Shown in pieces: positions 863 to 18,774 of a DNA stretch of 64,000 bases. Below the pieces are notes generated by a model, which saw nothing but the letters and a program-made list of their open reading frames with translations, did not search any database and was not told the DNA's origin. The position numbers and the translations under genes are program-made. Location: positions 1 to 64,000 of the IMG/VR virus record IMGVR_UViG_3300032050_000004; one strand, written 5' to 3'. The stretch's first letter is position 1. Each line of letters opens with the position of its first letter.

Positions 863-1156
863 TTAGTCCCATATTTGAGAAATCTCTCTGCGAAAAGGAT
901 TGTATTCAACTTGCTTTCCTAACACCCAATCACCTTTATTAACCTTCAATGTATTGTGTTCAGCAAATTGTCCATTAGGTTGTTCGTGTCGCAAATCACT
1001 ATCTTCCAACACTTCCACTTCTGCAAAGTGTGTATGATTTTCTTCAATTTTGAACTTACCATACAAAGTGTGTTGGTTTGCACCCTCACCTTTGAGGATA
1101 ATCGTTTTCTTTTGGGTTTTTTTCTTTGCTTTCATTTTATCGTGTTTTTTAATCAA
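863..1156 (-). CDS. Conserved phage hypothetical protein with His-rich beta motifs
   Basis: GEGANQHTL, HEQ...EHNTL and QVEYNPF motifs; class-1 promoter immediately upstream. Confidence 0.5.
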   Translation of the reverse strand: MIKKHDKMKAKKKTQKKTIILKGEGANQHTLYGKFKIEENHTHFAEVEVLEDSDLRHEQPNGQFAEHNTLKVNKGDWVLGKQVEYNPFRREISQIWD

Positions 1157-1336
1157 TACTTTTTTTAATTGAAAAGGTTTAAGAAAATTATATTTTTTTT
1201 AATTTTTTTTCTTCAACCTTTATGTTATTCAATACTTTTTTTAATTAAAAAGGTTTAATAAAAAAGATATTTATATGAACCTTTTTTATACATAAATATA
1301 AGTTCTAAAATAATAAATAAAGGTGTAACATAAACC

Positions 1337-1435
1337 AAAAATGTAAATTAGTTTTTGAATATCGTATATCTCTTTGGGATTTGACCCCAGTTTTCCCCGG
1401 GATCGCCTGCGGGAAACATCTTGGATACAGCGGGA
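1337..1435. repeat. Phased intergenic element copy A (right half-site plus arm)
   Basis: ATGTAA 1341, N16, CGTATATCT ending 1371; CAG/CGG/CTG at 1388, 1398, 1407, 1428. Confidence 0.85.
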
Positions 1436-1436
1436 T

Positions 1437-1470
1437 AAAAAAAAAGGGCTCGGAAACCCGAACCCTTTTT
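1437..1470. terminator. Bidirectional intrinsic terminator
   Basis: A-run, GGGCTCGG/CCGAACCC hairpin, T-run. Confidence 0.8.
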
Positions 1471-1841
1471 CATTTAATTTTCTTAATCTAAACACACATT
1501 GTTGTTTTTACAAACTTCCTTGTTTTAAGGAAATTACGAATAATTGTAATTTTAGAGGTAAGTCCATTCACCTTTCGATGATTTCTGACACTCTCCATCA
1601 TTTCTTCGTGTATTCGCAAATTAGCATTGTCATAGTTCGCAGTTTTTAAGTTACTTCCAAACATTGACTTAATAATAATTTCGTTTTGTTCGTCTATGCT
1701 TCTTTTCATTTTAATTATTTTAGTTTGTTTCAATACGGATTTTATTAGAAAAGGTTGAACGAAAATAATAAAATTTTATAATTTATTATAATTTTATTTT
1801 AATTAAATCTAAATCATCTCATTATCAAACTATTTAATTAA

Positions 1842-1935
1842 GAAATGTAAATTACTTTTTTCAATTCGTATATCTGATCGAAAATAACCCCCTGTTTTCA
1901 CCAGACACGGGCTTCTGAGTTCCAGAAACGGGTAG
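1842..1935. repeat. Phased intergenic element copy B (right half plus arm)
   Basis: ATGTAA 1845, N16, CGTATATCT ending 1875; CTG 1892, CAG 1902, CAG 1923; terminator at 1941-1973. Confidence 0.85.
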
Positions 1936-1993
1936 AAAACAAAAAACCCCCAACTTTTCAGTTGAGGGTTTTGTATTCACCTTTGATAAATTA

Positions 1994-2878
1994 CTAATAC
2001 TTTATTTTTTCAGTAATAGGTTTAATGTATTCATACAATTCATACTTAACACATAAGTTTACTAATTTGCCTTTTACCGAATAAAACTTTTCTTCATCTT
2101 CACAATTTTCAAATATACTTTCTAAAAAAGTATCCCTTCTTGTTTCATCAGTAATAATATCTGCAACATCTTCTTCTAATTCATTATCCCATTCTTCGTT
2201 TGAATAATAAGATAAACTCCAACCCAAATGTTCACTCATATCACCATCACTTTTTATACTTAAAGCAAATTTAGTTGCTTCGTAACCATTAGGTAAATAT
2301 TCTTTGACCAAATTACCATTGTCAAATACATAAATCCCACAATTATTTCCAATATCCTCATCAGCAAACTTCACTTCAAATAATAAATCAGGATATAATT
2401 CTGCAAGTTTATGAATGACTGGAAAAGGAGTTGACCACGCAGTATCGAATGAAATTGAATTTTCGCTTATTTGATAGTTGTCATAAGAATTCCATTTAGT
2501 TCCCCAATTAGCAATACTCCAACCATACCAATTAGCGTGTCCATATTTTTCAATGTTATCTAATGATATTTTTGCTTCCTCAAAATCTTGGGGAGAAAGC
2601 CTTTCATTTAAAAGTTGCTTTACACCCTCAACATCAGTAATGCCTTGTTCTTTAATCCAACTCCACTCCAACATTTCAGTAAATCTTTGAGTGTTATTTA
2701 TCAAAATACATATAGCATTATCAACATTACTTCCTGATGTAACCCTCAACGAAGGTGGCATAGGGAGAATTTTGTCAAAGTCAATTAAATTTTCATCTTC
2801 TTTTATGAAATCTAAAACTTCTTTTACCCTTTGCTCACTTCCTTTAATTGTGAGGATATTTGTAATGTGATTAGGCAT
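1994..2878 (-). CDS. DUF1281 / YubB (Api92-like) ferredoxin-like fold protein
   Basis: MPNHITN.L.I.G start, WYGWSIANWGTKWN and FDTAWSTP signatures. Confidence 0.8.
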   Translation of the reverse strand: MPNHITNILTIKGSEQRVKEVLDFIKEDENLIDFDKILPMPPSLRVTSGSNVDNAICILINNTQRFTEMLEWSWIKEQGITDVEGVKQLLNERLSPQDFEEAKISLDNIEKYGHANWYGWSIANWGTKWNSYDNYQISENSISFDTAWSTPFPVIHKLAELYPDLLFEVKFADEDIGNNCGIYVFDNGNLVKEYLPNGYEATKFALSIKSDGDMSEHLGWSLSYYSNEEWDNELEEDVADIITDETRRDTFLESIFENCEDEEKFYSVKGKLVNLCVKYELYEYIKPITEKIKY

Positions 2879-3916
2879 AATTTATTCTATTTTTTAATTA
2901 AAATTATTATTCTTCACTCTCTCCTACACCTACATCAATATAATCTATAACTTCCATACCATCCATTTTGGGGAGAAACAACTCCTCATCAGTATATTTA
3001 TCTTCCTTACGGAAACAAACCACAACTGAACCATCAACATCATCCAAATCAAATTTTGTATCATCAAATTCAATTAATGCTACAATAGTAACTACTGCTC
3101 GTTTAAGTGCCATAATTATTATTTTTTTTTAATCAATACGTTTATATTGAAAAAAGGTTTAAAATCTAATGAATAACCTTGAAATGCTCGTCATCAGTTA
3201 GGTGAACCCAACGAAATTCCATATTGTTATTTGACGCTATTCTCAATCCCAGCCAAACACCCGTTTTATTTTCAAAAAAAACCCGTTCCGTTATTGCTTC
3301 AACCACCCATTTCTCTTCTTTATGAATTGTCTTTTCTTTTGCAATTTCTGATATTGGTTCGAGTTTTACTTTATCACCTGTTCTTATATCTAACATAATT
3401 ATTTATTCTATTATCATTACGGATAAAATATAGAAAGGTCTAAAATAAAATTAATTATCTTTATTTTCAATAATTGAAACCATTTCTTTTAAATGATTTT
3501 CCAAATTGATAAGTTCATTTCTTATGTTTTGAATTTCCTCTAATGCTTTATCATATTTTCTGTTTGAGGTGAAAATGACTATTCTATCGCATTGAACTGG
3601 TATTGTCTTATTTGAAAGAACAATGATGTTTTGTTTAAGCTGATTGCTTCTTGTCATTTTATGTTGAGTTTGGTTTTTGTTTGTTCGATTATTTTTAAGC
3701 AAAAATCCTTCGCACTTTGTGGTGAACCATCAACAAACTCACAAGAGAAAGTATGATAATTAACTTCACTCACATAAACCTCATAAACAATAAATGAAAA
3801 TTTTAACTTCTCTATTTTAAGTGTACCATAATGCAATCTTGAATATCCGTTGAATTTTGACTTATCAAAATTGTCAAATTCAATTTTATAATTATCCATT
3901 TTATAGATTTTGTGTT

Positions 3917-4363
3917 TTACAATTTAGCAAGAAGAACATCCTCGTACTTGTAGTGTTTAGTCCCTTGTGTTTCCAAGAAATCAATCCTGTTCTTGAACCT
4001 TTTATTCATTGTATCCACAATAGTATAAACCCCACTCTTATGTCCTGCACCACTAATATACACCTTATCCCCATAATTGAAAACTCCTCCCCATCTTTTG
4101 AGCAAATCCCTTGAAACTGCAATCCATTTATGTTCCGACGCTTTATTTGGATTGATTTTGTACATACCAGCAGTTACCAAAGGGTCTTCATCACATTGAT
4201 TTACCACAGCATTATACATAGTTGCAGTTACCTTTACTGAATTTTGACTCTTAATTAAATCCTCTAATTGGTTAAGACGCTCATCATTTTCTTGTTGAAC
4301 GACCAACATATAAGTTGTATTTATAGCACTCAATACCATAAGGATATATACGGCTTTTTTCAT
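3917..4363 (-). CDS. 3D-domain (MltA-like) peptidoglycan hydrolase with N-terminal membrane anchor
   Basis: VTATMY, IAVSRDLL, YGDKV and VDTMNKRFKNRIDFL (three-Asp motif); hydrophobic N-terminus. Confidence 0.8.
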   Translation of the reverse strand: MKKAVYILMVLSAINTTYMLVVQQENDERLNQLEDLIKSQNSVKVTATMYNAVVNQCDEDPLVTAGMYKINPNKASEHKWIAVSRDLLKRWGGVFNYGDKVYISGAGHKSGVYTIVDTMNKRFKNRIDFLETQGTKHYKYEDVLLAKL

Positions 4364-4416
4364 AGTGGTTGGTTTTTAATCAATACTGATAAAAAACAAA
4401 AAGGTTTAAGAAAATA

Positions 4417-4525
4417 AAAATGTAAATTATCTTTTTAGGATCGTATATCTTGTCTGGAATTTGACACCTAGGGCCAGCAGTCCCGTCCAGTCAATTTCAG
4501 GATTCCACCAGAGAAAATCAGGACA
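4417..4525. repeat. Phased intergenic element copy C (right half plus arm)
   Basis: ATGTAA 4420, N16, CGTATATCT ending 4450; CAG at 4478, 4488, 4498, 4509, 4519; terminator at 4525-4561. Confidence 0.85.
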
Positions 4526-5513
4526 AAAAAAAAGAGAGCCAATTTCTTGACTCTCCTTTTTGAGATACGCAATGTTTTTCAATTCAAGTAATCAAACCCA
4601 AAGTGAATAAATCCCATTTCAATTAAATCATCATCAGACATCTTTTTAGGGTTTCTCCAAAAGTTAGGTTCTTGTTTATTCTCATCCTCTATAAGTTCAC
4701 TAATCCTTTTCAAAGCACCTTCATAGGTGAATTTCTTATCACCATCCGTTCTTTCAGTTTCAATAAACTCATATTTAATTCTCATATTAATCCATGTTTT
4801 GTTTAGCAAATTCAATCAATTTTTTAGCAAGTTCATCATCCAATTCATCCGTTACATCTTCATTATCCTCATCACGAATTTCAATTTCTTTGACAAAATA
4901 ACTATCGTAATCATCGTTGATAGTTACATGATAACAAGTATCCTCAACTTCAATTTCAAACTTGTGTGTTCTATTGATTACCTTGCTTATCAGTTCCATT
5001 GTTTATACAATTTTATAGTTTGTAATTTCTTCATCACTTATTTGGTCAAAAACATAATCTTTATCCAAACCCCTTACCGAAACCGAATCCACAATTTCTC
5101 CTTGTTTGTTAACCCAAATCTGAATATAAAAAGGTTCAGTATACCAAAGGTTGTTTTTTGCAACAGCACTCCAAGTTGTTTTGTGATGGTCAAATTCCTT
5201 TTTGCTAATGTTCATAGTGTTTGGTTTTTTTAATCAATACGAATAAAAAATAGAAAGGTTTAATTTTTTAGATTATTTTTTAATATATTTGTCATAAAAA
5301 ATTCCAAATCTGCCCAAAGTAGTTTTTCAGGAATCAAATTTGTATCTACACAACTCTTTTCATGTTTTGAATACATATATTCTATGAAATCACTCCAACA
5401 TGATTTGCAAACATTTCCAATAGATTGATAAGTGTTATTACAATTTTTGTTTTCACACCCTATTCTTGAACATTTGTTAAAATCCATATTAATACCAATT
5501 AGGATAGAAAAGG

Positions 5514-5858
5514 TTACTCCTCTTTTGCTTTTTTAAATTTATATTTTTTAATTGTGGTTCTTCCTAAACCAAATTTTTCCATTGTTTTTTTAACAGTGTT
5601 AGTTTTTGTGAACTCATAAATTTGTTCTTTGACCTTTTCAGATACGAACTCTACTTTCATTCCAGTATCAGTCAAATTTTCATTTTGACAATGATAATTA
5701 ATAGTTGATTTTGAACACTTCAATTTTTTTTGAATATCACGATAAGAATAACCTTCGTTTCTTAATTTTAAAATATCTTCTTTAATTCCCCTTCTACCAT
5801 TTTCGTGCAATCGGTCTTTATTGGAATTGTTAATTACAATTACGTGTTTAGTTGCCAT
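5514..5858 (-). CDS. Helix-turn-helix DNA-binding protein
   Basis: ILKLRNEGYSYRDIQKKLKCSKSTINYH is a classic HTH; a second HTH-like segment lies near the C-terminus. Confidence 0.7.
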   Translation of the reverse strand: MATKHVIVINNSNKDRLHENGRRGIKEDILKLRNEGYSYRDIQKKLKCSKSTINYHCQNENLTDTGMKVEFVSEKVKEQIYEFTKTNTVKKTMEKFGLGRTTIKKYKFKKAKEE

Positions 5859-5909
5859 ATTTTGTTTTTTAATTTAAATTAATGTCTAAAATATAAATTA
5901 AGGTTACAA

Positions 5910-6125
5910 TTAAGATTGTAAAAATCTTTTGTCCTTAACAAACTTCAAATGTCTTGCTTCATCCTTTGTCAAACCCACGAACTCACTTGGGGAGAATGAA
6001 ATCTCATCGGGGTAATAGTCAAAGAGATATTCTTCCACCCCATTTTCCAAAGTAACGTGAACTTGGGGCATAGGGTCAAATAAACTTTTAGGCATTGCCG
6101 TAATTCGTGCTGAAATTATTTTCAT
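5910..6125 (-). CDS. Conserved small phage protein
   Basis: LFDPMPQV...LFDYYPDEISF..SEFVGLT pattern; clean ORF behind a class-1 promoter. Confidence 0.55.
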   Translation of the reverse strand: MKIISARITAMPKSLFDPMPQVHVTLENGVEEYLFDYYPDEISFSPSEFVGLTKDEARHLKFVKDKRFLQS

Positions 6126-6467
6126 AGTTATCTTGTTTTTTAATCAATACGTTTTTAGGGAGAAAAGGTTTAAGATTTATAAATTATAAATGAGTAAAAC
6201 TCCCACAACCCATACATTGAATATAAGGTTTACCGCTATCTTTTATGGTAGGACTTTCCTTTGGTAAGATTATCCATTCAGTACCTTTGCAATCGTAACA
6301 CTCGCAATTAGGTAATCTCTCATCAAGGGTAAGCTGGTTAGCTATTCTTTCAGGATATACTGATTTTAACACATCAGCTTCAGGAATTTCTACTAATACC
6401 GATTGATAGAACTTTGACATAATTGATTTTTTAATCAATACGAATCAAAGTAAAAAAGGTTTAATTT

Positions 6468-6731
6468 TTAATTTAAAATTATTTGAAAAAATTGAAATCT
6501 TTCCGACTTAAATGCTTTTATATTATCGGTAGGATTTATTTCATCACCATTTCTATCAACTATGGTAACTGCCATTTCGTTGGTATTTAAGGAATCGGTG
6601 ATATACTTTAACTTATAAACTCTGTTCTTTTGGATCCACCTATCAGGTGTGAATTTTGGTAATGAATCATCTATACAAAATGCGAAAACATTAACGAAAG
6701 AAGCTGGTGCTATTAAATCTGCCATACCCAT
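6468..6731 (-). CDS. Hypothetical protein with late-type TATTTAT upstream
   Basis: ORF track; ATAAATA on + at 6741-6747; divergent from the DUF5856-like gene. Confidence 0.5.
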   Translation of the reverse strand: MGMADLIAPASFVNVFAFCIDDSLPKFTPDRWIQKNRVYKLKYITDSLNTNEMAVTIVDRNGDEINPTDNIKAFKSERFQFFQIILN

Positions 6732-6785
6732 ATGTTTATTATAAATAGTTTTTTTTTCGGTCTATTTATAATAAAATTAAAAAAA

Positions 6786-7157
6786 ATGCACCACAAAAGC
6801 GTAATAAAAATAATGAATTTTCAGCAACAAATGAGAATTCTTCATTGGCAAACCACTTCTTTTGCTCGTCATAATGCCTATGGTGGCATATATGATAGCA
6901 TAGATGATTTATTAGATAGATTTGCTGAAATTTGTATGGGTAAATACGGAAGAATTGAGCTTAATGATGAAATTTCTGAGCTTAAACTTAAAAACATGAA
7001 AGACCTTTCCATAAATTCTTATTTAAATGATTTTTGTGAATTTCTTGTTGAATTAACCGGTGAATTTGACGATGAAAAAGATACTGATGTGTTAAATATC
7101 AGAGATGAAGTTCTTGCTGAAGTAAATAAATTAAAGTATTTACTTACTCTTAAATAA
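6786..7157 (+). CDS. DUF5856 ferritin/Dps-like four-helix protein
   Basis: LHWQTTSFARHNAYGGIYDSIDDLLDRFAEICMGKYGR and C-terminal LNIRDEVLAEVNKLKYLLTLK; TATTTAT at 6763; terminator at 7177-7206. Confidence 0.75.
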   Translation: MHHKSVIKIMNFQQQMRILHWQTTSFARHNAYGGIYDSIDDLLDRFAEICMGKYGRIELNDEISELKLKNMKDLSINSYLNDFCEFLVELTGEFDDEKDTDVLNIRDEVLAEVNKLKYLLTLK

Positions 7158-7587
7158 TACACTATGATTTAAGCTGAAAGGGGAGGAAGTTTTTCCTCCC
7201 TTTTTCATTTTTATATTTTTAATATGATACTATAACCCTTTCAAGTTTTTCTACAACCATACAATTACCAACTTTTTCTGCTTTCATTTTTGCAATCCTT
7301 AATGCTCTTTCATAAGTCATTTTTGCACCGTCAACTTTAATAGTGTCAATTACATCTCTGCGAGTAGTCATTACTGTTTTGACAAGTCGAATTATTTGTA
7401 TCGCTTCACAAACAACTGAAATGTCATTAATAGTTTCATTTTTTGAAACTGCAATCTCTGTAGTTTCCAATTTAGAGCCGAATAAATCAAACGAGTTTTC
7501 CATTTTTTCCTTTTTTTAATCAATACGCTTTTTAATTAAAAAGGTTTAAGCTGAATCGAACTGACTAAACCTAAACTTTTCAAATTT

Positions 7588-7730
7588 AGTTATACGAAAG
7601 AAAAAAGATATTTTACACTTTATAAAAATGTAAATTAGTTTTTTAAGATCGTATATCTGATTATAAATATCCACCAGTTTTCACCGTCGACTGCCAGAAA
7701 TTTCACCGTAAACCAAAATACCGAGTTTGG
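7588..7730. repeat. Phased intergenic element copy D (both halves, 9-bp spacer)
   Basis: TACG 7593, N16, TTACAC 7613; ATGTAA 7628, N16, CGTATATCT ending 7658; CAG 7675, CCG 7684, CAG 7695, CCG 7706. Confidence 0.85.
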
Positions 7731-7824
7731 CACATTTTTACTTCCGAAAATGTCTTGTAAAAGATTAACATAAAAAAGAAAAAGCCGCATCTCTGCGGCT
7801 TTATCAATATAATCATTCCTTTGA

Positions 7825-8418
7825 TTACACAATCTTTATTTTACGATTATCAATGTAAATGAATTTTACATTATCAATCCCCACATTGAAAGTTCCAAAT
7901 GCCTCATCACCTCTAATTCCCAAATTGTAACTTCCTTTTGTAGATTTAATCAAAAATGTTTTTAATTGCTCTAATTGAAATTCAGTCGCCTTAACTCCAT
8001 CAACATAATACTCCGTAAAAGTACTCTCGTTTGAATTAGGATTAGTATAAACCCTCAAATACTTAATTGCAGGATTATCTTTCTTTACAGCAATAACATA
8101 GTTATCTCTGCCGTCAGATGATTCCACATAAGTTGATTCAGGTTTATATTCACCCTCAATACCCTTTTGCTCCCTTTGATTGTTACCTTTAGTAGAAGCA
8201 CTTGTATTGCAACCAAAACCCCACTTTGAAACTTTACGAACTCTACCAATAAAAGGATTACCCCTTTTATTCATTTTAGGTTCAGTGTCCGAAACCATAC
8301 TTCCATAAGTATGACTACCACCACGAACATTTTCCATAAAGGAAATAAATTCATCTTTACTCATTACTTCGTGAGAAATCTGATTGCAGATTTGCTCCAT
8401 TCTTTGTTCTTTGGTCAT
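7825..8418 (-). CDS. Conserved phage hypothetical protein
   Basis: 197-aa ORF containing TEPKMNKRGNPFIGRVRK...NNQREQKG; class-1 promoter at 8443. Confidence 0.6.
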   Translation of the reverse strand: MTKEQRMEQICNQISHEVMSKDEFISFMENVRGGSHTYGSMVSDTEPKMNKRGNPFIGRVRKVSKWGFGCNTSASTKGNNQREQKGIEGEYKPESTYVESSDGRDNYVIAVKKDNPAIKYLRVYTNPNSNESTFTEYYVDGVKATEFQLEQLKTFLIKSTKGSYNLGIRGDEAFGTFNVGIDNVKFIYIDNRKIKIV

Positions 8419-8561
8419 TTTGCGATTTTTTTTAGGTTAATATCAATACGGATTTTTTTGTAAAAGGTTTAATAAAACCCCCACATATATAATACGCAGT
8501 AACACCACCAAATCTTTAGTGTAAAATTAAAATATTTTTTAACTTATTGAAAATCAGTATA

Positions 8562-8593
8562 AAAGAAAAAGTCCCGGACTTCGGGACTTTTTT
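8562..8593. terminator. Bidirectional intrinsic terminator
   Basis: AAAAAGTCCCG-GACTT-CGGGACTTTTTT. Confidence 0.8.
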
Positions 8594-8989
8594 CTAACCA
8601 CTATGAAACACAATAAACAATTATAGAACCGAAACAAATATACACAAATTACTTATTCTTAACACTATAACTGTAAGATGAAAAAATAGTCCTATTGACA
8701 AATTCTTTTGTGCTTTCGCTAAATTCAAAACATTTCAATCCGTGAAGAATATTTTTTTCTCCAATACAATCCACTTCTTTCATAAGAAAGGTAATGAATT
8801 TCTCATACACAATATCTTCTCTCATATTATATCTTTTGCTGATGTGAGCAGAAACCTTTTTTAGAGTTGGATGCTTTGTAACATAATCCTCAATCACTTT
8901 TCTTTGGGTAATCATATTGAGTTTAGTTTTAGTTTTACTTACAATACGGATAATTAAAAAAAAGGTTTAAGAAATTATTTTACAGTTAA

Positions 8990-9203
8990 ATCCTGAAGAA
9001 CAGTAAAAAACTGGATAATTTAATTTTTAGATATACGATTGTTAAAAGTTATTTTACATATTAGGAGCAATTCATTTTACATATTAGGAGCAATTCATTT
9101 TACATATTGTAAAATGTAAATTAGTTTTTTCTTTTCGTATATCTGATCGAAAATGTGCCTGCTGTTCGAGCTGGAGCATCGCCTCAAGTTCAGGAATTAC
9201 AGC
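8990..9203. repeat. Phased intergenic element copy E (both halves; spacer contains a 23-bp tandem duplication)
   Basis: AGATATACGA 9029; TTTTACATATTAGGAGCAATTCA at 9052-9074 and 9075-9097 plus a partial third copy; TCGTATATCT 9135-9144; terminator at 9204-9233. Confidence 0.85.
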
Positions 9204-9257
9204 AAAAAAAAATCCCCGCTGATTTGCGGGGATTCTCAATTCTATAACAATGATATA

Positions 9258-9557
9258 TTATTCTTCTTCTTTGTATTCTCCTAATTCACTTTTAGGAGCC
9301 ACCAAAACATTACCGAGTATTTTAAGATTTTTCAAATTGTTTTTTTCACAATATACCTTACTTGCTATTTCATTTAAAGGTAAGTCAAAATACAAACCCT
9401 TACTATTCATTACCATAAATTCATCTCCGCAAGGCATTATACTAATCGAACCCGATACAATATCTTCTAACTCTTCTTTGGAATATTCCAAATCATTTTC
9501 GGGTGTACTATCAATTATTTTACTTTCACAAGTTATTATTTTTCCCATAGTTTTCAA
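9258..9557 (-). CDS. DUF3846-domain protein (divergent paralogue)
   Basis: YSKEELEDIVSG...MVMNSKG...LPLNEIAS...ILGNVLV parallels the DUF3846 pattern. Confidence 0.55.
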   Translation of the reverse strand: MKTMGKIITCESKIIDSTPENDLEYSKEELEDIVSGSISIMPCGDEFMVMNSKGLYFDLPLNEIASKVYCEKNNLKNLKILGNVLVAPKSELGEYKEEE

Positions 9558-9568
9558 TTTTACTATAT

Positions 9569-9931
9569 TTATTCAGGAATAATTAATTGCATAGCTTGTT
9601 CGTAGGTCATATCCATTTTTGTAATCGTTATTTTTGAAACAATTAACATTTCACCATTATCTTTTGAGGTGGGAAAATATACAAACAAACTATTATTTAT
9701 TTCTGCATCTGATAAAAAACGAGCATAATATGCACTTACATCACTTGCATCTTCCTTGACATCATAGAAATCATTATAACGAATAAAACCGATACGAAAG
9801 ACATTTCCTTGCCCTTGTATCAGTTTAACCATAACTGGATGTTTGAAATCCTTTGGCTTTGAAACGTTTTTATTTTGCCCATACGTATTGGTAGAGAAAA
9901 GCAAAATAAAAATAATAAATAATTTTTTCAT
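9569..9931 (-). CDS. Secreted hypothetical protein
   Basis: Signal peptide MKKLFIIFILLFSTNTYGQ. Confidence 0.55.
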   Translation of the reverse strand: MKKLFIIFILLFSTNTYGQNKNVSKPKDFKHPVMVKLIQGQGNVFRIGFIRYNDFYDVKEDASDVSAYYARFLSDAEINNSLFVYFPTSKDNGEMLIVSKITITKMDMTYEQAMQLIIPE

Positions 9932-11273
9932 ATTTTTTATTTTAACATATAATCCAAATAACTATTGCTGCAAAAATAACTTGTATAAGGGAGAAAGTTA
10001 GGATTGCCTCTAATCCTTCTTTCCAATTTTCTTTGAATGATTCTATCATTTTTATTTAATTTAATTAGGTTTATTTATTGATATTTTTTTTAGGGAGAAA
10101 CCAATCTACATCCTGCTCATAGTATTTTGTAGTTGATAATACTTATCTACAACCTCATTAATCTTGCTCATATCACCATAGTGAATGTTTTTCAAATTAA
10201 TAAAATGTGTCTTATTTGAACCTTTCAAACGATAATTGAATTTTACTTCACTCCCATCCTCAAACTCAATAAACGAAACATCCTTTTTGAAGATTTGCTG
10301 AATAATGTGAGCTGCTTGATATAGTTTCATATAAGTTTTTTTTAGTAAGCTGACAAACTTCTATTTTGTATTTGTTCAAATGTAGTAGCACTCCACTCGT
10401 CGTGCAATTCATTCGTTTTTTTGTGATAATATCTTGCTAAAACCTCTGCTATCTCTTCTAATTTTGAATTTTCTTGCCAATCTGTTATTGTGCAATCATT
10501 TCCAATTCTTGATAACATTCCACCACCTAAATAATTTTGGTATGCCGTCATCTTTTCTCCCTCAAAACCAAATGAAGACAAATCAATTTCAACACCACCA
10601 CCACGATAATCTACTTTTTCACGAAGAATACTGCTTTCTATAATTTCTTTGATTTTATCGTTTTTCATATTATCAATACGAATTAGGGAGAAAAAGGTTT
10701 AAATAATATTTCTCTTTTTTGATACGTCGATCAAATCATCACACTTCTCAATCATCTCTACCATATTCTCGATTTCAATCCCATCACAAATTGTCAACTT
10801 TCTCAATTTATCCAATGATTGTTTTAGGGTATCCTTTGTCTGATTCAGCAAATCCAAATCAACAGCAAGTTTTGATTCCACATCCCTACGAGTTTCACCA
10901 TCATTTGAACAACGTAACTGCAAAGTCCTCAAAGATTTCTCAAACCCATCAGGCCTAAATGAAATTTCACCCACCTTAATCCACGCCTTTGCCTTTATAA
11001 TTTCCGGACACGGTTTCTTGTTCACCATCTCGTAAGCACTCGTGTACTCCGATTTCAACTGCTCAAAATTGTCTGTCTTGTTCATTTTAAATTTAGATTT
11101 ATTTAATTGTTTAGTTTACAATGCTTTAGCTAACTCATCAAATACATAATACCATAGGGCAATAAGTCCACCCCAATAAACTATGCTAATTGTAAAATTA
11201 TAAATAATTCTTTTATGTTCCATCTTTAAAGAGGTTTTTTATAAGTTTTAAAATAAAATATATAATTTTTAAT

Positions 11274-11546
11274 TTAATCTATTTCCCCCTCATCAGCGAG
11301 TAACACGTCCCCAACAATCACATCAGTCATCCCATAGTGTTTTTGGAAAATCTCCGTTGCCTTTGAATTTATCTCAAAACCATTCAATTTACCCTCCTCG
11401 TTCAAAACAAGGAATTTATTTCCCACACCCACAATTTCAATATATCCATCAACGAACCCCTGTAGTTCCTTCAGTGAAAATCCATGCCCCTTTTTGCTGG
11501 GATAAACTTCACTAACATCCCCGTTTGCTTTCATTAATATTCCCAT
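11274..11546 (-). CDS. DUF3846-domain protein
   Basis: SLKELQGFVDGYIEIV...LNEEGKLNG..IN.KAT...DVIVGDV. Confidence 0.8.
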   Translation of the reverse strand: MGILMKANGDVSEVYPSKKGHGFSLKELQGFVDGYIEIVGVGNKFLVLNEEGKLNGFEINSKATEIFQKHYGMTDVIVGDVLLADEGEID

Positions 11547-11588
11547 AGTTTTATCTTTTTAATCAATACGTTTTTTAATTCAAAAGGT

Positions 11589-12044
11589 TTAATTCTTAAC
11601 CCAATTTAATTTATATGTAGGGTTATATCTTCCTTCCGAACAATTTCCACAAGATTGACTTTTGTTTGTTTTTCTGAACCTTGTAAATACTTTGTTGCAA
11701 CCACAACAAGTCGCTGAATAATTTCCTTTGACAGTTTCTACTTCATTTGAACTATAACACCTTTCGCCATCACATCCAATCTGAATTGCTTTCGCTCTCC
11801 AAACTTCATTATGTCCTTCCTTCGGACAAAGTGCGTGAGCAATTTCGTGCAAGATTGTATTCTTAACCCTACTCATTTCGTTTAATTCAGTCAAATACAC
11901 TGATAATGTAATTCGCTTTGAACGATACTTGCAACAACCAAACCTTCTTTTTGCATTGTCAAATTCAAATCTCCAACCCTGCTGAACTATTCCGTGTTTA
12001 GTCATAAGTTGAATTGCCAAATCTTTTGCTTCGTTGAGTTTCAT
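11589..12044 (-). CDS. SprT-like zinc metalloprotease
   Basis: FEFDNAKRRFGCC, TILHEIAHA (HExxH), H...W, and C-terminal CxxC zinc-ribbon motifs. Likely start is MKLNE at 12044. Confidence 0.85.
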   Translation of the reverse strand: MKLNEAKDLAIQLMTKHGIVQQGWRFEFDNAKRRFGCCKYRSKRITLSVYLTELNEMSRVKNTILHEIAHALCPKEGHNEVWRAKAIQIGCDGERCYSSNEVETVKGNYSATCCGCNKVFTRFRKTNKSQSCGNCSEGRYNPTYKLNWVKN

Positions 12045-12121
12045 AATAGGTGGTTTATACATTCAATACGGATAAAATAAAAAAAGGTTTAAGACCACCA
12101 CAAAACTATTTTCAAAAATTT

Positions 12122-12275
12122 AGATATACGAATATGAATATTTAAATTACATTATCAAAAATGTAAATTAGTTTTTTTAATTCGTATATCTTGTTTGGGA
12201 TTTGACCCCTGTAAACGCCAGATCCGGGCTAGGAAACAGGTTCTAGCGGGAGAGATTGGAAATTATGCGGGAGAG
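12122..12275. repeat. Phased intergenic element copy F (both halves, 8-bp spacer)
   Basis: AGATATACGA 12122, TTACAT 12147, ATGTAA 12161, TCGTATATCT 12182-12191; CTG 12209, CAG 12219, CTAG 12229. Confidence 0.85.
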
Positions 12276-12541
12276 ATAAAAACAAAAAACCCACAACTTC
12301 CGTTGCGGGTTTCAAGCGGGGGAGAATCTCAACCCCTATTATTTAAAGTATTTCTCTGTCTTTCATACTTTTTCCATCAGTTTTATTTGAAATTCCACTT
12401 TCTTCATTAATTCTCTTTGACAATCATCACACCTTTCCCTAAAAAACAATTTGAGATTAGGTTTATTATTATCACAATGTTTGCAAGGTTTCTTCCAAGC
12501 CTTGTCAAAGGCATTATCAGTAATCATACCTTTCATATCCT

Positions 12542-12754: not shown

Positions 12755-13290
12755 AGGTTTTGTTTTTTTTATTTATCAATAAATTCTAAACTTTTATAAG
12801 CAATATCCAATACTGCACCATTATCAAATCTTACTGCTACAAATGTATCCCAACTACCCCACATACCTACTTTATAATTTGGTATAGTTTTTCCACTTGA
12901 ACCCTCAATACATCTTGAATCATACCTTGTCAAATCAACTTTAAGTTTCACTTTTTTGGGTTTACCGCCTATTTGCATATTTCTTCTTTTTTGGTTATGC
13001 TATCAATACGAATAAAATTAAAAAAGGTTTAATTAAAAAACACAAATCATTAAAAAAACAATCGCAGCCAAAATTTGCATTCTATTCAATCCTTTTGAAA
13101 CTCCCTCTCTGCTCATAAAACTTGTCTGAACAATCATAACCAATGCTGAAACTGAAATTATCTTGTCAATCAATAAACACTCATCCCAAGGATGTTTTCC
13201 GAAATACAAAATAGAGAAACAATAAGCAAAATATCCTATGATTGAAAGATGAACTCTGAATGTTCTGAATTGAAGGTTTGTAATCATATC

Positions 13291-13731: not shown

Positions 13732-13778
13732 AGTGGTTATTTTTTAATCAATACTGATTTTTATTAAAAAGGTTTAAT

Positions 13779-14890: not shown

Positions 14891-15067
14891 TTAATTTTCC
14901 TCCTCCAATAATTGTTTAATTGATTCGATACATAAACTCATTTCGTGTTGAGGTGAACCCCCTTCTTCTATTTCACTTTGACATAATTCTACTAATCCAA
15001 TAACCTCATCTTTAAGGTTTGGGTGTTCGCTAATAAATTGCTTTGCAAATTGAATTACTTCTTTCAT
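14891..15067 (-). CDS. Small hypothetical protein (58 aa, not in the track)
   Basis: MKEVIQFAKQFISEHPNLKDEVIGLVELCQSEIEEGGSPQHE...; class-1 promoter at 15084. Confidence 0.6.
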   Translation of the reverse strand: MKEVIQFAKQFISEHPNLKDEVIGLVELCQSEIEEGGSPQHEMSLCIESIKQLLEEEN

Positions 15068-15481
15068 AGGTTTTATTTTTTAATCAATACGGAAATAAAT
15101 TAAAAAGGTTTAATTATTAAATAAAAAAAGGGTTCGGTAACCAGCCGAACCCCTAACCATAAAAAACCACCTATGAACCACGAACTTTCTTTATTTCCTT
15201 GCCTTTTCTATCAATACTAATTTAATTTGAAAAGGTTTATTTTTTTTTATTTTTTTTATACTTGCTTTTCTAATAATTATATTTTATTTTAGTTAAAGAT
15301 TAAGCATTACTATTATTGTTTGCTTTAGTCATAGTGTTTTGTTTTGTCCGTAGCCCGTTTAGTCACGGGCTATGGTTTTTTTAGAAGGTGTTGATTGTGT
15401 GAATGAATGAACAAATCATAAATCCACCCAACACCATAACCACAAGCAACTCAATGGTGTATTTAATTTTATTTTCCATTT

Positions 15482-15676
15482 TCAATAGAAATTATAACAT
15501 CCATAACTTTTTACACTTTTGTTCCTCGAATACTTCTTAACATTTGAAGATGAATGTTTTTGAGTTTTTTGTTTGAATTTAGTTATGCTTGAATACGCAG
15601 CACATTGCTCTGTTGAACTACAAGAACTCAAAAACCAAACCGAAATAATTGCCGTTACAATAATTAATTTTTTCAT
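15482..15676 (-). CDS. Small lipoprotein with SC....C.AY motif and basic tail
   Basis: MKKLIIVTAIISVWFLSSCSSTEQCAAY. Confidence 0.65.
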   Translation of the reverse strand: MKKLIIVTAIISVWFLSSCSSTEQCAAYSSITKFKQKTQKHSSSNVKKYSRNKSVKSYGCYNFY

Positions 15677-16191
15677 ATATATAAAGTTTTTAGTTTTCAA
15701 ACAAATAAAACATACCAAAATTGTGTATCCCAACAATGCTTACAACCACATTTCCTTTATTGTCTTTGGGAGCATTCTCAACCATAAATTGAACTGCCCT
15801 CATTTCAGCAATCTTTTGAATAAACTCTTTTAGAGAATTGCTAATTTCGTTATTTTCGTTTTCTTCTTTCATAGTTTTAGGTTTTTAATCAATACGGAAA
15901 TAAATTAAAAAGGTTTATTAGAATCGTAAACTAATTTCATATAGAAATCGCTCACTTCATCCATATCATCAGATTGAAATACTACATTATACCAATCTGA
16001 CCGATATTCACCACCCGAAGTCATAAACATTTTATTATCTTCTTTATTAAGATAAATTACAAATTTCTTTTCAGTATTTGATAGAGGAGGATTTGGGTTA
16101 AATTCTTGTTCTTTGGTCTTTTTCATAGTTCTTGGTTCTTACAATCAATACTTATATTATTAGAAAAGGTTTGAATTAAATTGAAATTTTT

Positions 16192-16430
16192 CTCCCTGAT
16201 AAACATCCTGATTTTTACTGGATCAATCCTGAGAACTGGCGTTTTACAGGGGAGAGTTTTATAAAAGATATACGATATTAAATTTCTAATTTACATTTTT
16301 AGGGGAGAGATAAAAATGTATTTTACTTTTTTTAATTCGTATATCTTGTTTGGAATTTTTCCGCCTTCCAGCTCGAGTTCAGGCTGAGGAGAGGCTCAAG
16401 CGGGAGAAGTCAAAGTTCAGCGGGGGAGAA
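16192..16430. repeat. Phased intergenic element copy H (both halves, 19-bp spacer identical to copy G)
   Basis: CWG at 16196, 16208, 16218, 16229, 16247; AGATATACGA 16266; TCGTATATCT 16337-16346. Confidence 0.9.
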
Positions 16431-16725
16431 TAAAAACGAAAACCCCCACCTCTTGCGAAGCGGGGGTCTTATTTTATTTAGCGGGGGGAGTGCCATATAA
16501 GGCGAGTTCCATTTTCCCCTATCGAAGTGCCGTTGGGTCAATTCGGCTTGTCTATATCGGCTCGGATTTTAATGCCCTGCCTATCGGGAACCCTTTTAGT
16601 TTCTATATATTTTATAAAGATAATTATTAAGATTTAATTTCGGGGGGACTCTTGTTCATCTATATTCGGATTAAGCAATGTTTTGATTTTTTTTATCATA
16701 TAGGGTTATTTTGAATTTACTATCG

Positions 16726-16905
16726 CTAATATCGAAGTTTCGCACGTTTCATTCCTTTCGCAGCAGCCACACTTGGTCGATGCTTGTGATTGTTATATTT
16801 ATGTTTTCCCACATCACGATACGCCCAACAAGTTTCAGTAGATGCACAAGAAGTCATTGTAAGACCATATCCGATAATCATTACAGCAAGAAGGAGTTTT
16901 TTCAT
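16726..16905 (-). CDS. Small lipoprotein (59 aa, not in the track), paralogue-like to 15482-15676
   Basis: MKKLLLAVMIIGYGLTMTSCASTETCWAYRDVGKHK...; class-1 promoter at 16931. Confidence 0.65.
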   Translation of the reverse strand: MKKLLLAVMIIGYGLTMTSCASTETCWAYRDVGKHKYNNHKHRPSVAAAKGMKRAKLRY

Positions 16906-16976
16906 AGTGTTTGTTTTTTTTGTTATACTATCAATACTTTTTTAATTTAGAAAGGTTTAAGATATTTCAATTTTAT

Positions 16977-17246
16977 TTACAAATAATCACTTCCGTTATT
17001 GAGTGTTGTTTTACTTTTAATGAACTCCATTACTTTGTCAGCATAATAAGATGAAGTCAATTCGTTCAGATAGCTCAAAGTTTTCCAATAAGCATCATAT
17101 TCATTTGTCATAAAATTTCCTCCAACAACTTCCTTTTTACTATTGTAGTCAAGTGCTTTAATTGAAAGTGCATTTCCGTTCAAGTCAACCTTGATAATTC
17201 CTCCAACCGCATATTCTCCAATCTTAAATGATTTTGTTGCTTTCAT
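16977..17246 (-). CDS. Hypothetical phage protein
   Basis: ORF track; class-1 promoter at 17262. Confidence 0.55.
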   Translation of the reverse strand: MKATKSFKIGEYAVGGIIKVDLNGNALSIKALDYNSKKEVVGGNFMTNEYDAYWKTLSYLNELTSSYYADKVMEFIKSKTTLNNGSDYL

Positions 17247-17756
17247 AAGTTTGTTTTTTAATCAATACGATTTAATTAGAAAAAGGTCTAATTTTTATCA
17301 AAGAATTATAAATTAAACCACTAATCATAATTGATATAATCATATCGAACCAAACAAATAAAAACAAATCATCCCTTGTTGGTGTTTGAAATAATAAGAT
17401 ACTCATACAACAAATTGTATTTATTAGTAAAATACCAATCAAGGTTGCACCAATGTAATTTGACAAAGTTCTTTCCATATTTTTTTATTTTTTAGATTAG
17501 ATTAAAAAAGGGATATTGTTAATACCCCTTTTTATGTTTATCCTTTCTTGAATAAGTTTTTTTATCCCGATACACTTTTTCTTTGTGTATGTTATACATA
17601 CCCATTTCAAGCATAATATCTCGATGGATACCCTTATCCACTTTCACTTTTTCCTTTGCAGTATTTACCTTTTTCATTGTGTTTTAGTTTTTGTTGGTTC
17701 ATAGTTACAATCAATACTAATAAATTGTAAATAGGTTTAAGAAAAACAAAAAAAAT

Positions 17757-17890
17757 CCCCCCCAGAAACCAGCCCGTTTTTCTGGCTATGCTATAATATA
17801 GATATACGATATTAAAAAGGTATTTTACATTTTTTGCGTTATGCATTTTGTGTAATAAAATGTATTTTATTTATTTCAATTCGTATATCT
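17757..17890. repeat. Phased intergenic element copy I (29-bp spacer) at the minus-to-plus strand switch
   Basis: AGATATACGA 17800, TTACAT 17825, ATGTAT 17860, TCGTATATCT 17881-17890. Confidence 0.85.
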
Positions 17891-18016
17891 GAAATTTACA
17901 ATATCCAATTTTCAAGCACAAACACCTCAAAATATAATTTCATTTATTTTAATTTACCTTAAACCTTTTCCTATTAAATAAGTATTGATAATATAACCAA
18001 CAAAAAAACTACGAAA

Positions 18017-18664
18017 ATGAAAACCACCAACAAAACACTTAATGAACTTATCGCAAAGATTGTTTCAGTTTATGGATGTGATGAACAACAAGTATTGCGA
18101 CTAATTGAAATTACAACGGATATGTCAAAGGGTGCAAAATTTGCAACAATCAAAGATTATTCATCGGACAAATCTGAACATTCTGAAATTGCAAATCATT
18201 CTATTATCTTAAACTTTTCATATAAAAATATGAAAAAAGATGATAAAGAAACTTTGAGAACTTTTGATGTTAATTTAGTTGATGTAAATAAATTCAATTA
18301 TGATAGTATTGATACAAAAGGTATGGAATTGAGTGCATATAAAAATGAAGTAAGAAATTCACTACAAAATGCACTTTATGAAATAAATAACCCTAAACAA
18401 GTTGAAAGGGTAAATAATGATGATTACTTGAATGATATTTTAGTGTTTAATTGGAATACTGAAAGATTGTCAATAATTGGTCAAGGGGTAAAAAAAGAAA
18501 CAATAGTTGAAGGAGAATATAAAAAAGTAAAGTCAGCACCTTTGACAATAGCAAAAAAGTTGATAATGAAACAAGCAAATTTAAGAGTTGATAAATATCG
18601 TAGGTATGCAATAGACAATTTAAGTATTGTTAATTTGCAAGGGGAAAATTTGGAAATTCAATAA
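18017..18664 (+). CDS. Hypothetical phage protein
   Basis: 215-aa ORF behind a plus-strand class-1 promoter (17959); terminator at 18678-18705. Confidence 0.65.
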   Translation: MKTTNKTLNELIAKIVSVYGCDEQQVLRLIEITTDMSKGAKFATIKDYSSDKSEHSEIANHSIILNFSYKNMKKDDKETLRTFDVNLVDVNKFNYDSIDTKGMELSAYKNEVRNSLQNALYEINNPKQVERVNNDDYLNDILVFNWNTERLSIIGQGVKKETIVEGEYKKVKSAPLTIAKKLIMKQANLRVDKYRRYAIDNLSIVNLQGENLEIQ

Positions 18665-18774
18665 AACAAGGCAAATTAAAAGGGGAAAAAATTTCCCCTT
18701 TTTTTATATTAAATCTTAAACCTTTTTAATTAAAATAAGTATTGATATTGTAACCAACTAAAAAACTAAACACT

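What the first reader, a model, noticed from the sequence alone, without database searches (positions are those of the whole stretch)
1153..18746. About 29 ECF-sigma-type promoters drive the early region instead of the Bacteroidota housekeeping promoter
Seen: TTAAAC-CTTTT-N11-(C/A)GTATTGAT before nearly every small ORF, with a fixed 16-nt gap (checked at 3137-3162, 11567-11592 and 17959-17984). Variants with CGTATTACTATT are duplicated at 19261 and 19330. Established: the Bacteroidota primary sigma uses TTTG/TAnnTTTG, whereas AAC-N16-CGT with a T-tract is the ECF (SigW/M/X) pattern. Inference: early transcription relies on a phage-supplied or co-opted ECF sigma. It shares the CGTA -10 and N16 gap with the phased element, hinting at one polymerase with interchangeable -35 readers. 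One promoter per gene also makes each ORF a portable cassette.
Basis: partly seen in the sequence, partly recalled or inferred. Interest (0 to 1): 0.62.

Follow-up and report, generated by a model that had tools for sequence, protein, structure and literature searches.

The report
Phage ECF-sigma promoter array
A very large phage of Bacteroidota-type bacteria carries about 50 near-identical promoters of the ECF (SigW-like) type in front of its small genes, and just outside the window it encodes its own SigW-like sigma factor that most likely reads them: a tidy new example of a known phage strategy, not a new mechanism.

Summary
The motif is real. A weight-matrix scan finds 28 sites in the window (26 on the minus strand, 2 on the plus strand), all between 1152 and 18746. 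None occurs elsewhere in the 222-kb record.

The consensus is TTAAACCTTTTt-N10-cGTAtTGAt, with an invariant AAC-N16-(C/A)GTA geometry. A start codon lies a median 16 nt downstream.

The window starts inside the array. An overlapping contig continues it 27.5 kb to the left, giving 50 sites over 46 kb. That contig also links this record to a second 217-kb contig, so the genome is about 450 kb.

The leftmost site heads an operon that encodes a 225-aa ECF sigma. Its best specific matches are B. subtilis SigW, whose promoters are tGAAACnTTTt/CGTA. Directly upstream of the sigma gene sits a conserved Bacteroidota housekeeping-type promoter (TTG…TAnnTTTG).

Relatives with 45-79% identical sigmas keep the synteny, but each carries its own variant of the motif.

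Most likely model: host sigmaA makes the phage ECF sigma, which then redirects host RNA polymerase to these promoters and to its own operon.

Not shown: transcription start sites, timing, sigma-promoter binding. "One promoter per gene" is overstated (28 sites per 47 ORFs). This is a new member of a known kind.

The parts
1152..1182 (-). ECF-type promoter (class 1)
   Evidence: PWM 42 bits; ATG 16 nt on; 90-aa ORF
1228..1258 (-). ECF-type promoter, tandem with the one at 1152
   Evidence: 39 bits; same ORF, ATG 92 nt on
1729..1759 (-). ECF-type promoter, weaker -35 (TCAACC)
   Evidence: 28 bits; ATG +19; 73 aa
3132..3162 (-). ECF-type promoter
   Evidence: 38 bits; ATG +18; 68 aa
3413..3443 (-). 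ECF-type promoter, variant TTAGACC / GTAATG
   Evidence: 28 bits; ATG +16; 76 aa
4379..4409 (-). ECF-type promoter, E2 element just upstream
   Evidence: 40 bits; ATG +15; 148 aa
5233..5263 (-). ECF-type promoter
   Evidence: 38 bits; ATG +17; 70 aa
6143..6173 (-). ECF-type promoter
   Evidence: 40 bits; ATG +17; 71 aa
6434..6464 (-). ECF-type promoter
   Evidence: 38 bits; ATG +13; 78 aa
7519..7549 (-). ECF-type promoter
   Evidence: 39 bits; ATG +15; 94 aa
8442..8472 (-). ECF-type promoter
   Evidence: 34 bits; ATG +23; 197 aa
8940..8970 (-). ECF-type promoter, GTATTGTA variant
   Evidence: 33 bits; ATG +24; 88 aa
10672..10702 (-). ECF-type promoter
   Evidence: 34 bits; ATG only 3 nt on; 108 aa
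11562..11592 (-). ECF-type promoter
   Evidence: 38 bits; ATG +15; 90 aa
12062..12092 (-). ECF-type promoter before SprT-like gene
   Evidence: 38 bits; ATG +17; Pfam SprT-like
13002..13032 (-). ECF-type promoter
   Evidence: 38 bits; ATG +23; 69 aa
13747..13777 (-). ECF-type promoter
   Evidence: 41 bits; ATG +15; 146 aa
14074..14104 (-). ECF-type promoter
   Evidence: 42 bits; ATG +16; 92 aa
14418..14448 (-). ECF-type promoter, GTACTG variant
   Evidence: 30 bits; ATG +17; 94 aa
15083..15113 (-). ECF-type promoter
   Evidence: 40 bits; ATG +15; 58 aa
15210..15240 (-). ECF-type promoter with no ORF behind it
   Evidence: 36 bits; followed by terminator 15154-15128; candidate ~85-nt RNA
15888..15918 (-). 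ECF-type promoter, same 32 nt as site 15083
   Evidence: 37 bits; ATG +15; 60 aa
16144..16174 (-). ECF-type promoter
   Evidence: 36 bits; ATG +17; 73 aa
16930..16960 (-). ECF-type promoter
   Evidence: 39 bits; ATG +24; 59 aa
17261..17291 (-). ECF-type promoter, TTAGACC variant
   Evidence: 32 bits; ATG +14; 89 aa
17710..17740 (-). ECF-type promoter, last of the minus-strand series
   Evidence: 35 bits; ATG +32; 52 aa
17959..17989 (+). ECF-type promoter, first of two on the plus strand (divergent point 17740/17959)
   Evidence: 38 bits; ATG +27; 215 aa; this ORF is absent in relatives
18716..18746 (+). ECF-type promoter, right-hand end of the array
   Evidence: 38 bits; ATG +28; 66 aa
1..17846 (-). 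Block of about 40 small minus-strand ORFs (median ~94 aa) served by the promoters, cut into units by hairpin terminators
   Evidence: ORF calls. Terminator-like hairpins: 30 found against 6.8 expected. Pfam finds only DUF6915, DUF1281_C, SprT-like and a resolvase-type HTH

Best explanation
The repeats are promoters read by the host's RNA polymerase core carrying a phage-encoded ECF (group 4) sigma factor.

That sigma is a 225-aa SigW-like protein. Its gene lies outside the window, about 26.4 kb to the left on the same phage genome (G003:69882-70556).

Proposed order of events:
1. Host sigmaA polymerase transcribes the sigma gene from a conserved TTG-N17-19-(G/T)ATATTTG promoter directly upstream of it.
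2. The new sigma binds core polymerase. It fires about 50 promoters of the form TTAAACCTTTT-N11-(C/A)GTATTGAT, spread over 46 kb; 28 of them are in this window.
3. Each promoter drives a short unit of one to three small genes, with a 10-20 nt A-rich leader and frequent hairpin terminators.
4. One of these promoters heads the operon that contains the sigma gene, which gives positive feedback.

Shown: the motif, its statistics, its placement, the sigma gene, the synteny, and the lineage-specific motif variants.
Inferred: that this sigma reads this motif, where transcription starts, and the timing.
For: 1. The motif is far beyond chance and confined to one region.
2. It is asymmetric and bipartite with fixed spacing. 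It is always co-oriented with an ORF whose ATG follows at a median 16 nt, and nothing else conserved lies between motif and ATG.
3. Its form, AAAC-n-TTTT then CGTA 16 nt after the AAC, equals the published sigmaW form tGAAACnTTTt / CGTA, including the -35-proximal T-tract (PMC5758882).
4. The phage encodes an ECF sigma: Pfam Sigma70_r2 36 bits and Sigma70_r4_2 46 bits with no region 3; NCBIfam sigma70-ECF 90 bits. The best specific models are SigW (80.5 and 69.6 bits). The best solved structure by sequence is B. subtilis SigW 5WUQ at E 1e-14, against 1e-8 for sigmaE.
5. The leftmost motif copy sits before the ORF283-sigma operon. The same placement is seen in three diverged lineages.
6. Relatives with 79, 63, 56 and 45% identical sigmas keep the synteny but carry lineage-specific variants of the motif, consistent among sites within a lineage. 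Examples are TACC/AGAATTGAT, TGTAACC/GGTATTAA and TGTAACT/CGTATTAAA.
7. A sigmaA-type promoter directly upstream of the sigma ATG is conserved in all five lineages.
8. No RNA polymerase beta or beta-prime, or T7-type polymerase, was found in any of the three contigs.
Against: - No transcription start site, expression timing or binding data exist. The only runs that hold the sequence are probably DNA, and only as contigs.
- The C of CGTA is A in 14 of 50 sites. The conserved -10 block (GTATTGAT) is longer than classical ECF -10 elements.
- A second ECF-like class, tGTAAC-N16-CGTTTAAA with about 13 sites, also exists. It could be the true target of this sigma.
- The sigma in the 79%-identity lineage has almost the same recognition helices, although its motif differs at core positions. 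The specificity change is therefore not explained.
- No anti-sigma partner is recognisable; the neighbours are an unknown 283-aa protein and a cREC_REC protein.
- Two giant virion-type ORFs (2505 and 2580 aa) have no detectable homology, so a cryptic polymerase is not excluded.
Confidence: 0.75

Rival explanations
1. A host ECF sigma is co-opted. The promoters are read by a host envelope-stress ECF sigma, activated for example by infection itself. The phage sigma would then serve another promoter class, or only amplify the response.
For: The motif is a good general ECF (SigW-type) promoter. A second ECF-like class exists that is nearly invariant between phage lineages, as expected for a host reader. 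It could equally be the other way round.
Against: The class 1 motif changes at core positions between phage lineages, which fits a reader carried by the phage. The motif heads the phage sigma operon in four lineages. No bacterial genome among 185,579 species encodes a relative above about 26% identity by the word-limited scan. The host is unknown, so its promoters could not be examined.
Confidence: 0.1
2. A phage-encoded or virion-packaged polymerase of unrecognised type, as in N4 or crAss-like phages, reads the motif. The resemblance to ECF promoters would then be coincidental.
For: Two adjacent giant ORFs (2580 and 2505 aa), next to a 1739-aa protein with an amidase domain, have no Pfam or PHROG match. 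The arrangement resembles ejected cargo proteins. The crAss virion polymerase was also invisible to sequence searches (own knowledge).
Against: No DxDxD triad in the giant ORFs. No polymerase family hits in six-frame searches. The motif matches the ECF geometry base for base, and an ECF sigma gene sits behind a copy of it.
Confidence: 0.05
3. The motif is chiefly an operator for a repressor or a recombination site, not the promoter itself.
For: In three runs of related strains, a joint lies exactly at the two plus-strand copies (17989 to 18714). So the copies can act as recombination homology.
Against: The motif has no dyad symmetry and keeps strict co-orientation and a fixed short distance to start codons. 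No other conserved element that could serve as promoter lies between it and the ATG. E. coli-type sigma70 matches are not enriched: 102 against 106 expected.
Confidence: 0.03

Closest known systems
Bacillus subtilis sigmaW and its regulon (ECF sigma; promoters tGAAACnTTTt ... CGTA)
   Same: The sigma is the best specific match by NCBIfam and by PDB sequence search. The promoters share the AAC core, the -35-proximal T-tract, the CGTA -10 and the spacing (the N16 spacing of sigmaW promoters is from my own knowledge).
   Different: - About 25-30% identity, and scores far below the SigW equivalog cut-offs (80.5 against 209 bits).
- Encoded by a phage of a Bacteroidota-type host.
- No RsiW-like anti-sigma.
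- The -10 block extends to GTATTGAT.
- The regulon consists of phage genes of unknown function.
Phage-encoded sigma factors that redirect host polymerase (phiEco32 gp36, phage 7-11, SPO1 gp28, T4 gp55)
   Same: A phage gene for a sigma-family protein. Cognate promoters are spread over the phage genome. The sigma itself is made first by the host holoenzyme (PMC12276001, PMC8948821; SPO1 and T4 from own knowledge).
   Different: - Those sigmas drive middle or late genes from a short -10-like element (AATGTA for gp36).
- Here a canonical two-block ECF promoter drives about 50 units of small accessory genes.
- The sigma sits in an operon behind its own promoter.
- No gp79-like helper has been identified.
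'RNA polymerase sigma-W factor' genes annotated in crAss-like phages (cr1_1, cr10_1 and others)
   Same: ECF-type sigmas in phages of Bacteroidota, 25-30% identical to this one. In cr1_1, about six GAAC-N16-ACGTTATAG sites precede genes.
   Different: - Only a handful of sites, and they lie before structural-region genes on the other strand.
- Genome of about 100 kb with a virion polymerase.
- No paper in the searchable library describes their promoters.
T4-type early promoter arrays and PeSL mobile regulatory cassettes
   Same: Dozens of strong near-identical promoters before small early genes. The units are bounded by hairpins. Gene gain or loss occurs between repeated promoter copies (T4 and PeSL from own knowledge).
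   Different: - T4 early promoters use the host primary sigma.
- Only one recombination joint has been seen.

Membership tests
ECF (group 4) sigma-70 family, for the phage protein P0001 | Sigma region 2 and region 4 present, regions 1.1 and 3 absent, about 200 aa | tested here: met
   Pfam Sigma70_r2 36.1 bits and Sigma70_r4_2 46.1 bits, with no region 3 hit; 225 aa; NCBIfam TIGR02937 at 90.1 bits against a cut-off of 42.9
ECF (group 4) sigma-70 family, for the phage protein P0001 | Gene preceded by its own target promoter (autoregulation) | tested here: met
   Sequence level only. A class 1 site lies 25 nt before ORF283, the first gene of the sigma operon. The same placement is seen in lineages L039, L041 and L042, but not in L044
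ECF (group 4) sigma-70 family, for the phage protein P0001 | Co-transcribed anti-sigma factor | tested here: inconclusive
   The neighbours are a 283-aa protein with no Pfam, NCBIfam or PHROG hit and a cREC_REC protein. No known anti-sigma domain was found
SigW orthologue (NCBIfam equivalog NF007223 / TIGR02948) | Score above the equivalog cut-off | tested here: not met
   80.5 bits against 209, and 69.6 against 243. SigW-like, not SigW
ECF-type promoter | AAC in the -35 block | tested here: met
   A 50/50 and C 50/50; the preceding A is present in 48/50
ECF-type promoter | CGT in the -10 block at a fixed 16-17 nt from the AAC | tested here: met
   Spacing is 16 in all 50 sites. G and T are 50/50. 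The C is present in 36/50 and is A in 14/50
ECF-type promoter | Transcription starts 5-10 nt after the -10 block and depends on the sigma | not testable with these tools
   No RNA runs hold the sequence. The runs laid are probably DNA, and only as contigs
Bacteroidota sigmaA promoter (-33 TTTG, -7 TAnnTTTG) | TAnnTTTG about 7 nt before the start site | tested here: not met
   The motif holds no TAnnTTTG. Such boxes occur elsewhere in the phage: before the sigma gene, before an intron-bearing tRNA, and as TATATTTG, 12 against 0.9 expected, upstream of other genes
Phage sigma cascade (SPO1 / phiEco32 type) | Phage sigma made by the host holoenzyme, then directing a later gene class | tested here: inconclusive
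   The sequence logic fits, with a sigmaA-type promoter before the sigma gene. There are no temporal data
PeSL-like mobile regulatory cassette | Gene exchange by recombination between repeated promoter or hairpin units | tested here: inconclusive
   One joint, 17989 to 18714, in three runs of one study

The most novel reading that the evidence does not exclude
Sigma and promoter co-diversify between closely related phage lineages. The core positions change (AAC to TAC, GTA to GAA or GGTA) while the sigmas remain 63-79% identical. Each lineage would then run a private, mutually orthogonal transcription channel. This would shield its accessory genes from co-infecting relatives and from host control. 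The nearly invariant tGTAAC-N16-CGTTTAAA class would be the shared, or host-read, channel.
Probability: 0.2. Interest if true: 0.65.

Novelty: new member of a known kind. Interest (0 to 1): 0.45.

Why it matters
- It gives a concrete, testable transcription programme for an uncultured phage of about 450 kb. The programme has three phage sigmas, no phage polymerase, and one sigma matched to a 50-promoter regulon.
- It offers a set of natural ECF sigma/promoter pairs from Bacteroidota-type phages. If they are orthogonal, they would be useful expression parts for Bacteroidota, whose promoters differ from the E. coli type.
- For annotation, the promoters mark true gene starts and unit boundaries in a region where almost nothing has a known function.

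Tried and rejected
- **Nearest deposited phages.** DNA search of the phage collection gave only two short hits to 634-636-kb uncultured phages.
- **114-aa ORF at 5514-5858.** It gave a weak Sigma70_r4_2 hit but is a generic resolvase-type HTH, not a sigma.
- **Giant ORFs as a virion polymerase.** No family hit and no aspartate triad. This cannot be fully excluded.
- **RNA evidence.** The only runs holding the stretch are labelled RNA-Seq but are probably DNA. They are kept as contigs of 90-99% relatives, so they give no start sites.
- **Close viral relatives of the sigma.** The single-protein scan found only the same phage.
- **Bacterial relatives.** The alignment scan found nothing above about 26% identity, so there is no host clue and no host promoter to compare.
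- **E. coli-type sigma70 promoters.** Not enriched.
- **TAnnTTTG upstream of genes in general.** Only weakly enriched: 32 sense against 27 antisense.
- **Rfam.** No family for the ORF-less unit at 15240-15120.
- **Mistaken call.** One call with a too-short reference.
- **Complex prediction.** None was run, because no protein-protein binding is claimed.


Full report
**Observation**

The window has about 29% G+C. It is the first 64 kb of a 222,069-bp IMG/VR virus record.

I built a weight matrix from the AAACC-N16-GTATT seeds and scanned the whole record. It gave 28 sites, all above 27 bits, with nothing between 12 and 27 bits. All lie between 1152 and 18746: 26 on the minus strand and two on the plus strand at 17959 and 18716.

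The consensus over all 50 sites of the phage is TTAAACCTTTTt, ten variable A/T-rich bases, then cGTAtTGAttaa. A3, C4, T6, G22, T23, A24, T26 and G27 are invariant. The spacing never varies.

Forty-eight of the 50 sites are followed on the same strand by an ATG ORF of at least 50 aa. That ORF begins 3-32 nt after the GAT (median 16). The A-rich leader has no Shine-Dalgarno sequence: only 6 of 283 genes have GGAG-like words in the last 20 nt.

'Nearly every ORF' is not: there are 28 sites for 47 ORF calls. The ACGTATTACTATTA copies at 19280 and 19350 exist but lack the AAC block, so they are not members of this class.

**The array and the genome are larger than the window**

A scan of viral contigs for the motif found three contigs.

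- Contig G003 (108,663 bp) matches window 1-12366 at 99.96% with its positions 96295-108663. It continues to the left.
- Its positions 49904-86581 equal the right end of G001 (216,699 bp) at 99.8%.
- So G001, a 9.7-kb bridge and this record are one genome of at least 448 kb.
- The free ends of G000 and G001 both stop inside the same 9-nt-periodic Gly/Ser-coding repeat. The circle probably closes there.

On the composite, the matrix finds 50 sites between window coordinates -27509 and +18746. Forty-seven are on the minus strand and serve about 90 small ORFs (median 94 aa). Three are on the plus strand, at the two edges. None occurs in the other ~400 kb.

Terminator-like hairpins are enriched in the window part: 30 against 6.8 expected. 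They cut the block into units.

**The reader of the motif**

Six-frame family searches found no sigma region 2 in the 222-kb record. They did find an ECF-type gene at G003:69882-70556, about 26.4 kb left of the window start.

The protein (P0001, 225 aa) has these properties:

- It has Sigma70_r2 and Sigma70_r4_2, and no region 3.
- It passes the NCBIfam sigma70-ECF model.
- It ranks SigW first among specific models, though far below the equivalog cut-offs.
- The closest solved structure by sequence is B. subtilis SigW, at E 1e-14 against 1e-8 for sigmaE.

Published sigmaW promoters read tGAAACnTTTt with a CGTA -10, and the T-tract next to the -35 is functional (PMC5758882). The phage motif has the same AAC, the same C/n-TTTT, the same CGTA and, from my own knowledge of sigmaW promoters, the same N16 spacing.

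The leftmost motif copy (plus strand, window coordinate -27509) lies 25 nt before a 283-aa ORF. That ORF is followed by the sigma gene and a cREC_REC gene. This is the autoregulatory layout typical of ECF sigmas.

**Relatives**

The word search found a family of 45-100% identical sigmas, all from metagenomes. Contigs for four lineages (79, 63, 56 and 45% identity) keep the synteny: ORF~283, sigma, cREC_REC, then a convergent block of small genes that includes GP88 and DUF932 genes.

Each lineage has its own form of the motif, and the form is consistent among sites within the lineage:

| Lineage | Sigma identity | -35 form | -10 form |
|---|---|---|---|
| L039 | 79% | TGATACCTTTTT | AGAATTGAT |
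| L041 | 63% | TGTAACCTTTT | GGTATTAA (five sites) |
| L042 | 56% | AGAAACCTTTTT | AGTATTAAT |
| L044 | 45% | TTGTAACTTTCT | CGTATTAAA |

A copy precedes the operon that holds the sigma in L039, L041 and L042. Another precedes the orthologous GP88 gene in all lineages. A motif that keeps its place but changes its letters with the phage lineage fits a reader encoded by the phage.

Directly upstream of the sigma start codon, all five lineages share TTGTC, 17-19 nt, then (G/T)ATATTTGT. This is the Bacteroidota housekeeping pattern, TTG and TAnnTTTG (the consensus is from my own knowledge).

**Model**

1. Host sigmaA polymerase makes the sigma.
2. The sigma then turns core polymerase to the 50 promoters and to its own operon.

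On this model the array is delayed-early or middle rather than immediate-early, unless the sigma is packaged in the virion. That could not be tested. The phage also encodes two RpoD/RpoS-like sigmas of 287 and 285 aa. It has no detectable RNA polymerase subunit or T7-type enzyme. It therefore depends on host core polymerase.

**What remains open**

- No start site, timing or binding data exist. The runs that hold the stretch are probably DNA, and are kept only as contigs.
- A second ECF-like class, tGTAAC-N16-CGTTTAAA, has about 13 sites spread over the genome. It is almost unchanged between lineages, and its reader is unknown. It could be a host ECF sigma, or the same phage sigma.
- A third repeat, E2 (AGATATACGA, 11-13 nt, AATTTACATTTTT), has about 27 copies confined to the same region. 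It occurs singly or as inverted pairs, usually between a terminator and a class 1 promoter. Read backwards it looks like TGTAAA-N15-CGTATATCT. In that orientation the single copies point against the genes, so I do not accept it as evidence for interchangeable -35 readers.
- Two giant ORFs without any homology leave a small chance of a cryptic polymerase.

**Cassette idea**

In contigs of related strains from one study, window 17989 joins 18714 with 32 other letters between. The 215-aa ORF and its terminator, which lie between the two plus-strand promoter copies, are absent. This is one case consistent with gain or loss of units between promoter repeats, as described for T4-type phages (own knowledge).

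**Comparison and novelty**

- Phage sigmas that redirect host polymerase are well known (phiEco32 gp36, PMC12276001; phage 7-11, PMC8948821; jumbo phages of group 2, PMC7824862).
- Huge phages of Bacteroidetes are known (PMC7162821). The only DNA hits of this window in the phage collection are to the 634-636-kb genomes of that kind.
- ECF genes annotated 'sigma-W factor' exist in crAss-like phages at 25-30% identity. In one of them I see only about six GAAC-N16-ACGTTATAG sites, and they lie before structural-region genes.
- I found no paper on promoters of such phage ECF sigmas.

The finding is thus a new and unusually large member of a known kind, not a new mechanism.

**Host**

The host is unknown. 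Several observations point to a freshwater member of the Bacteroidota:

- the leaders lack a Shine-Dalgarno sequence;
- TTG/TAnnTTTG promoters precede the sigma gene and a tRNA;
- one homologue sits on a contig binned as Bacteroidota;
- the sigma is related to those of crAss-like phages;
- the samples are lake or aquatic.

Noticed in passing
whole record; G003 96295-108663 = window 1-12366; G001 180001-216699 = G003 49904-86581: Three IMG/VR contigs tile one genome of at least 448 kb. The free ends of G000 (about 219.4-222.07 kb) and G001 (1-500) both stop in the same 9-nt-periodic Gly/Ser-coding repeat. That repeat probably broke the assembly and closes the circle. CheckV's 83-87% completeness figures are therefore misleading.
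   Followed up: partly
window 1371, 1875, 4450, 7588/7658, 9029/9144, 12122/12191, 14520/14600, 16266/16346, 17800/17890, 19094/19174, 19907; further copies left of the window: Repeat E2: (a)ACAGG, about 15 nt, AGATATACGA, 11-13 nt, AATTTACATTTTT. About 27 copies occur only in the promoter-array region, single or as inverted pairs, usually between a terminator and a class 1 promoter. Its function is unknown. Backwards it reads TGTAAA-N15-CGTATATCT.
   Followed up: partly
window 47477(+), 55940(+); record 73580, 101368, 153765, 184499, 189651, 198574 (all -); composite -27603, -25128, -18513, -15941: A second ECF-like promoter class, tGTAAC-N15/16-(A)CGTTTAAAtt, lies 12-25 nt before start codons. 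It is scattered over the genome and is nearly unchanged before the DUF932 gene in four diverged relatives.
   Followed up: partly
many sites from 24.7 kb onward, e.g. window 24711(-), 35767(+), 39523(+), 43631(-): CTATTTAT(A) is strongly enriched just upstream of genes outside the array (23 against 1.2 expected), often right after a terminator. It is probably another promoter class, perhaps late. It resembles a T4-late-like single -10 box.
   Followed up: no
window 15240-15120 (-): A class 1 promoter is followed after about 55 nt by a strong hairpin terminator with no ORF, making a candidate small RNA of about 85 nt. It has no Rfam match, and its fold is only mildly better than shuffles (z -1.7).
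   Followed up: partly
L019:17666-17858 (-) = G003 85666-85858, about 10.5 kb left of the window: A tRNA gene is interrupted in its anticodon loop by a group I intron (Rfam RF00028, 54.3 bits, above gathering). ARAGORN misses the tRNA. The gene sits behind a textbook Bacteroidota TTG-N19-TACATTTG promoter.
   Followed up: yes
G001 about 67.8-69.6 kb (L026:1006-1866 and 1975-2829, both -): Two adjacent RpoD/RpoS-like sigma genes (287 and 285 aa, with regions 1.2, 2, 3 and 4). With the ECF sigma, the phage carries three sigmas and no detectable RNA polymerase.
   Followed up: partly
window 17989 to 18714: In contigs of 90-99% related strains (three runs, one study), the 215-aa ORF between the two plus-strand promoters is replaced by 32 nt. 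The breakpoints are at the promoter copies.
   Followed up: partly
record 132155-153032 (-): Three giant ORFs lie in a row (1739, 2580 and 2505 aa). Only the first has a recognisable domain, a C-terminal Amidase_2. They are possibly ejected virion proteins. Two tail-sheath paralogues at 208.4-213.5 kb show the phage is a myovirus.
   Followed up: partly
MT774380.1 (crAss-like phage cr1_1), L053 11221, 23956, 26677, 28395, 37398 (all -): This crAss-like phage has an annotated sigma-W-like gene (39317-39883). It also has about six GAAC-N16-ACGTTATAG sites before minus-strand genes. This hints that its ECF sigma has a small regulon of its own.
   Followed up: partly
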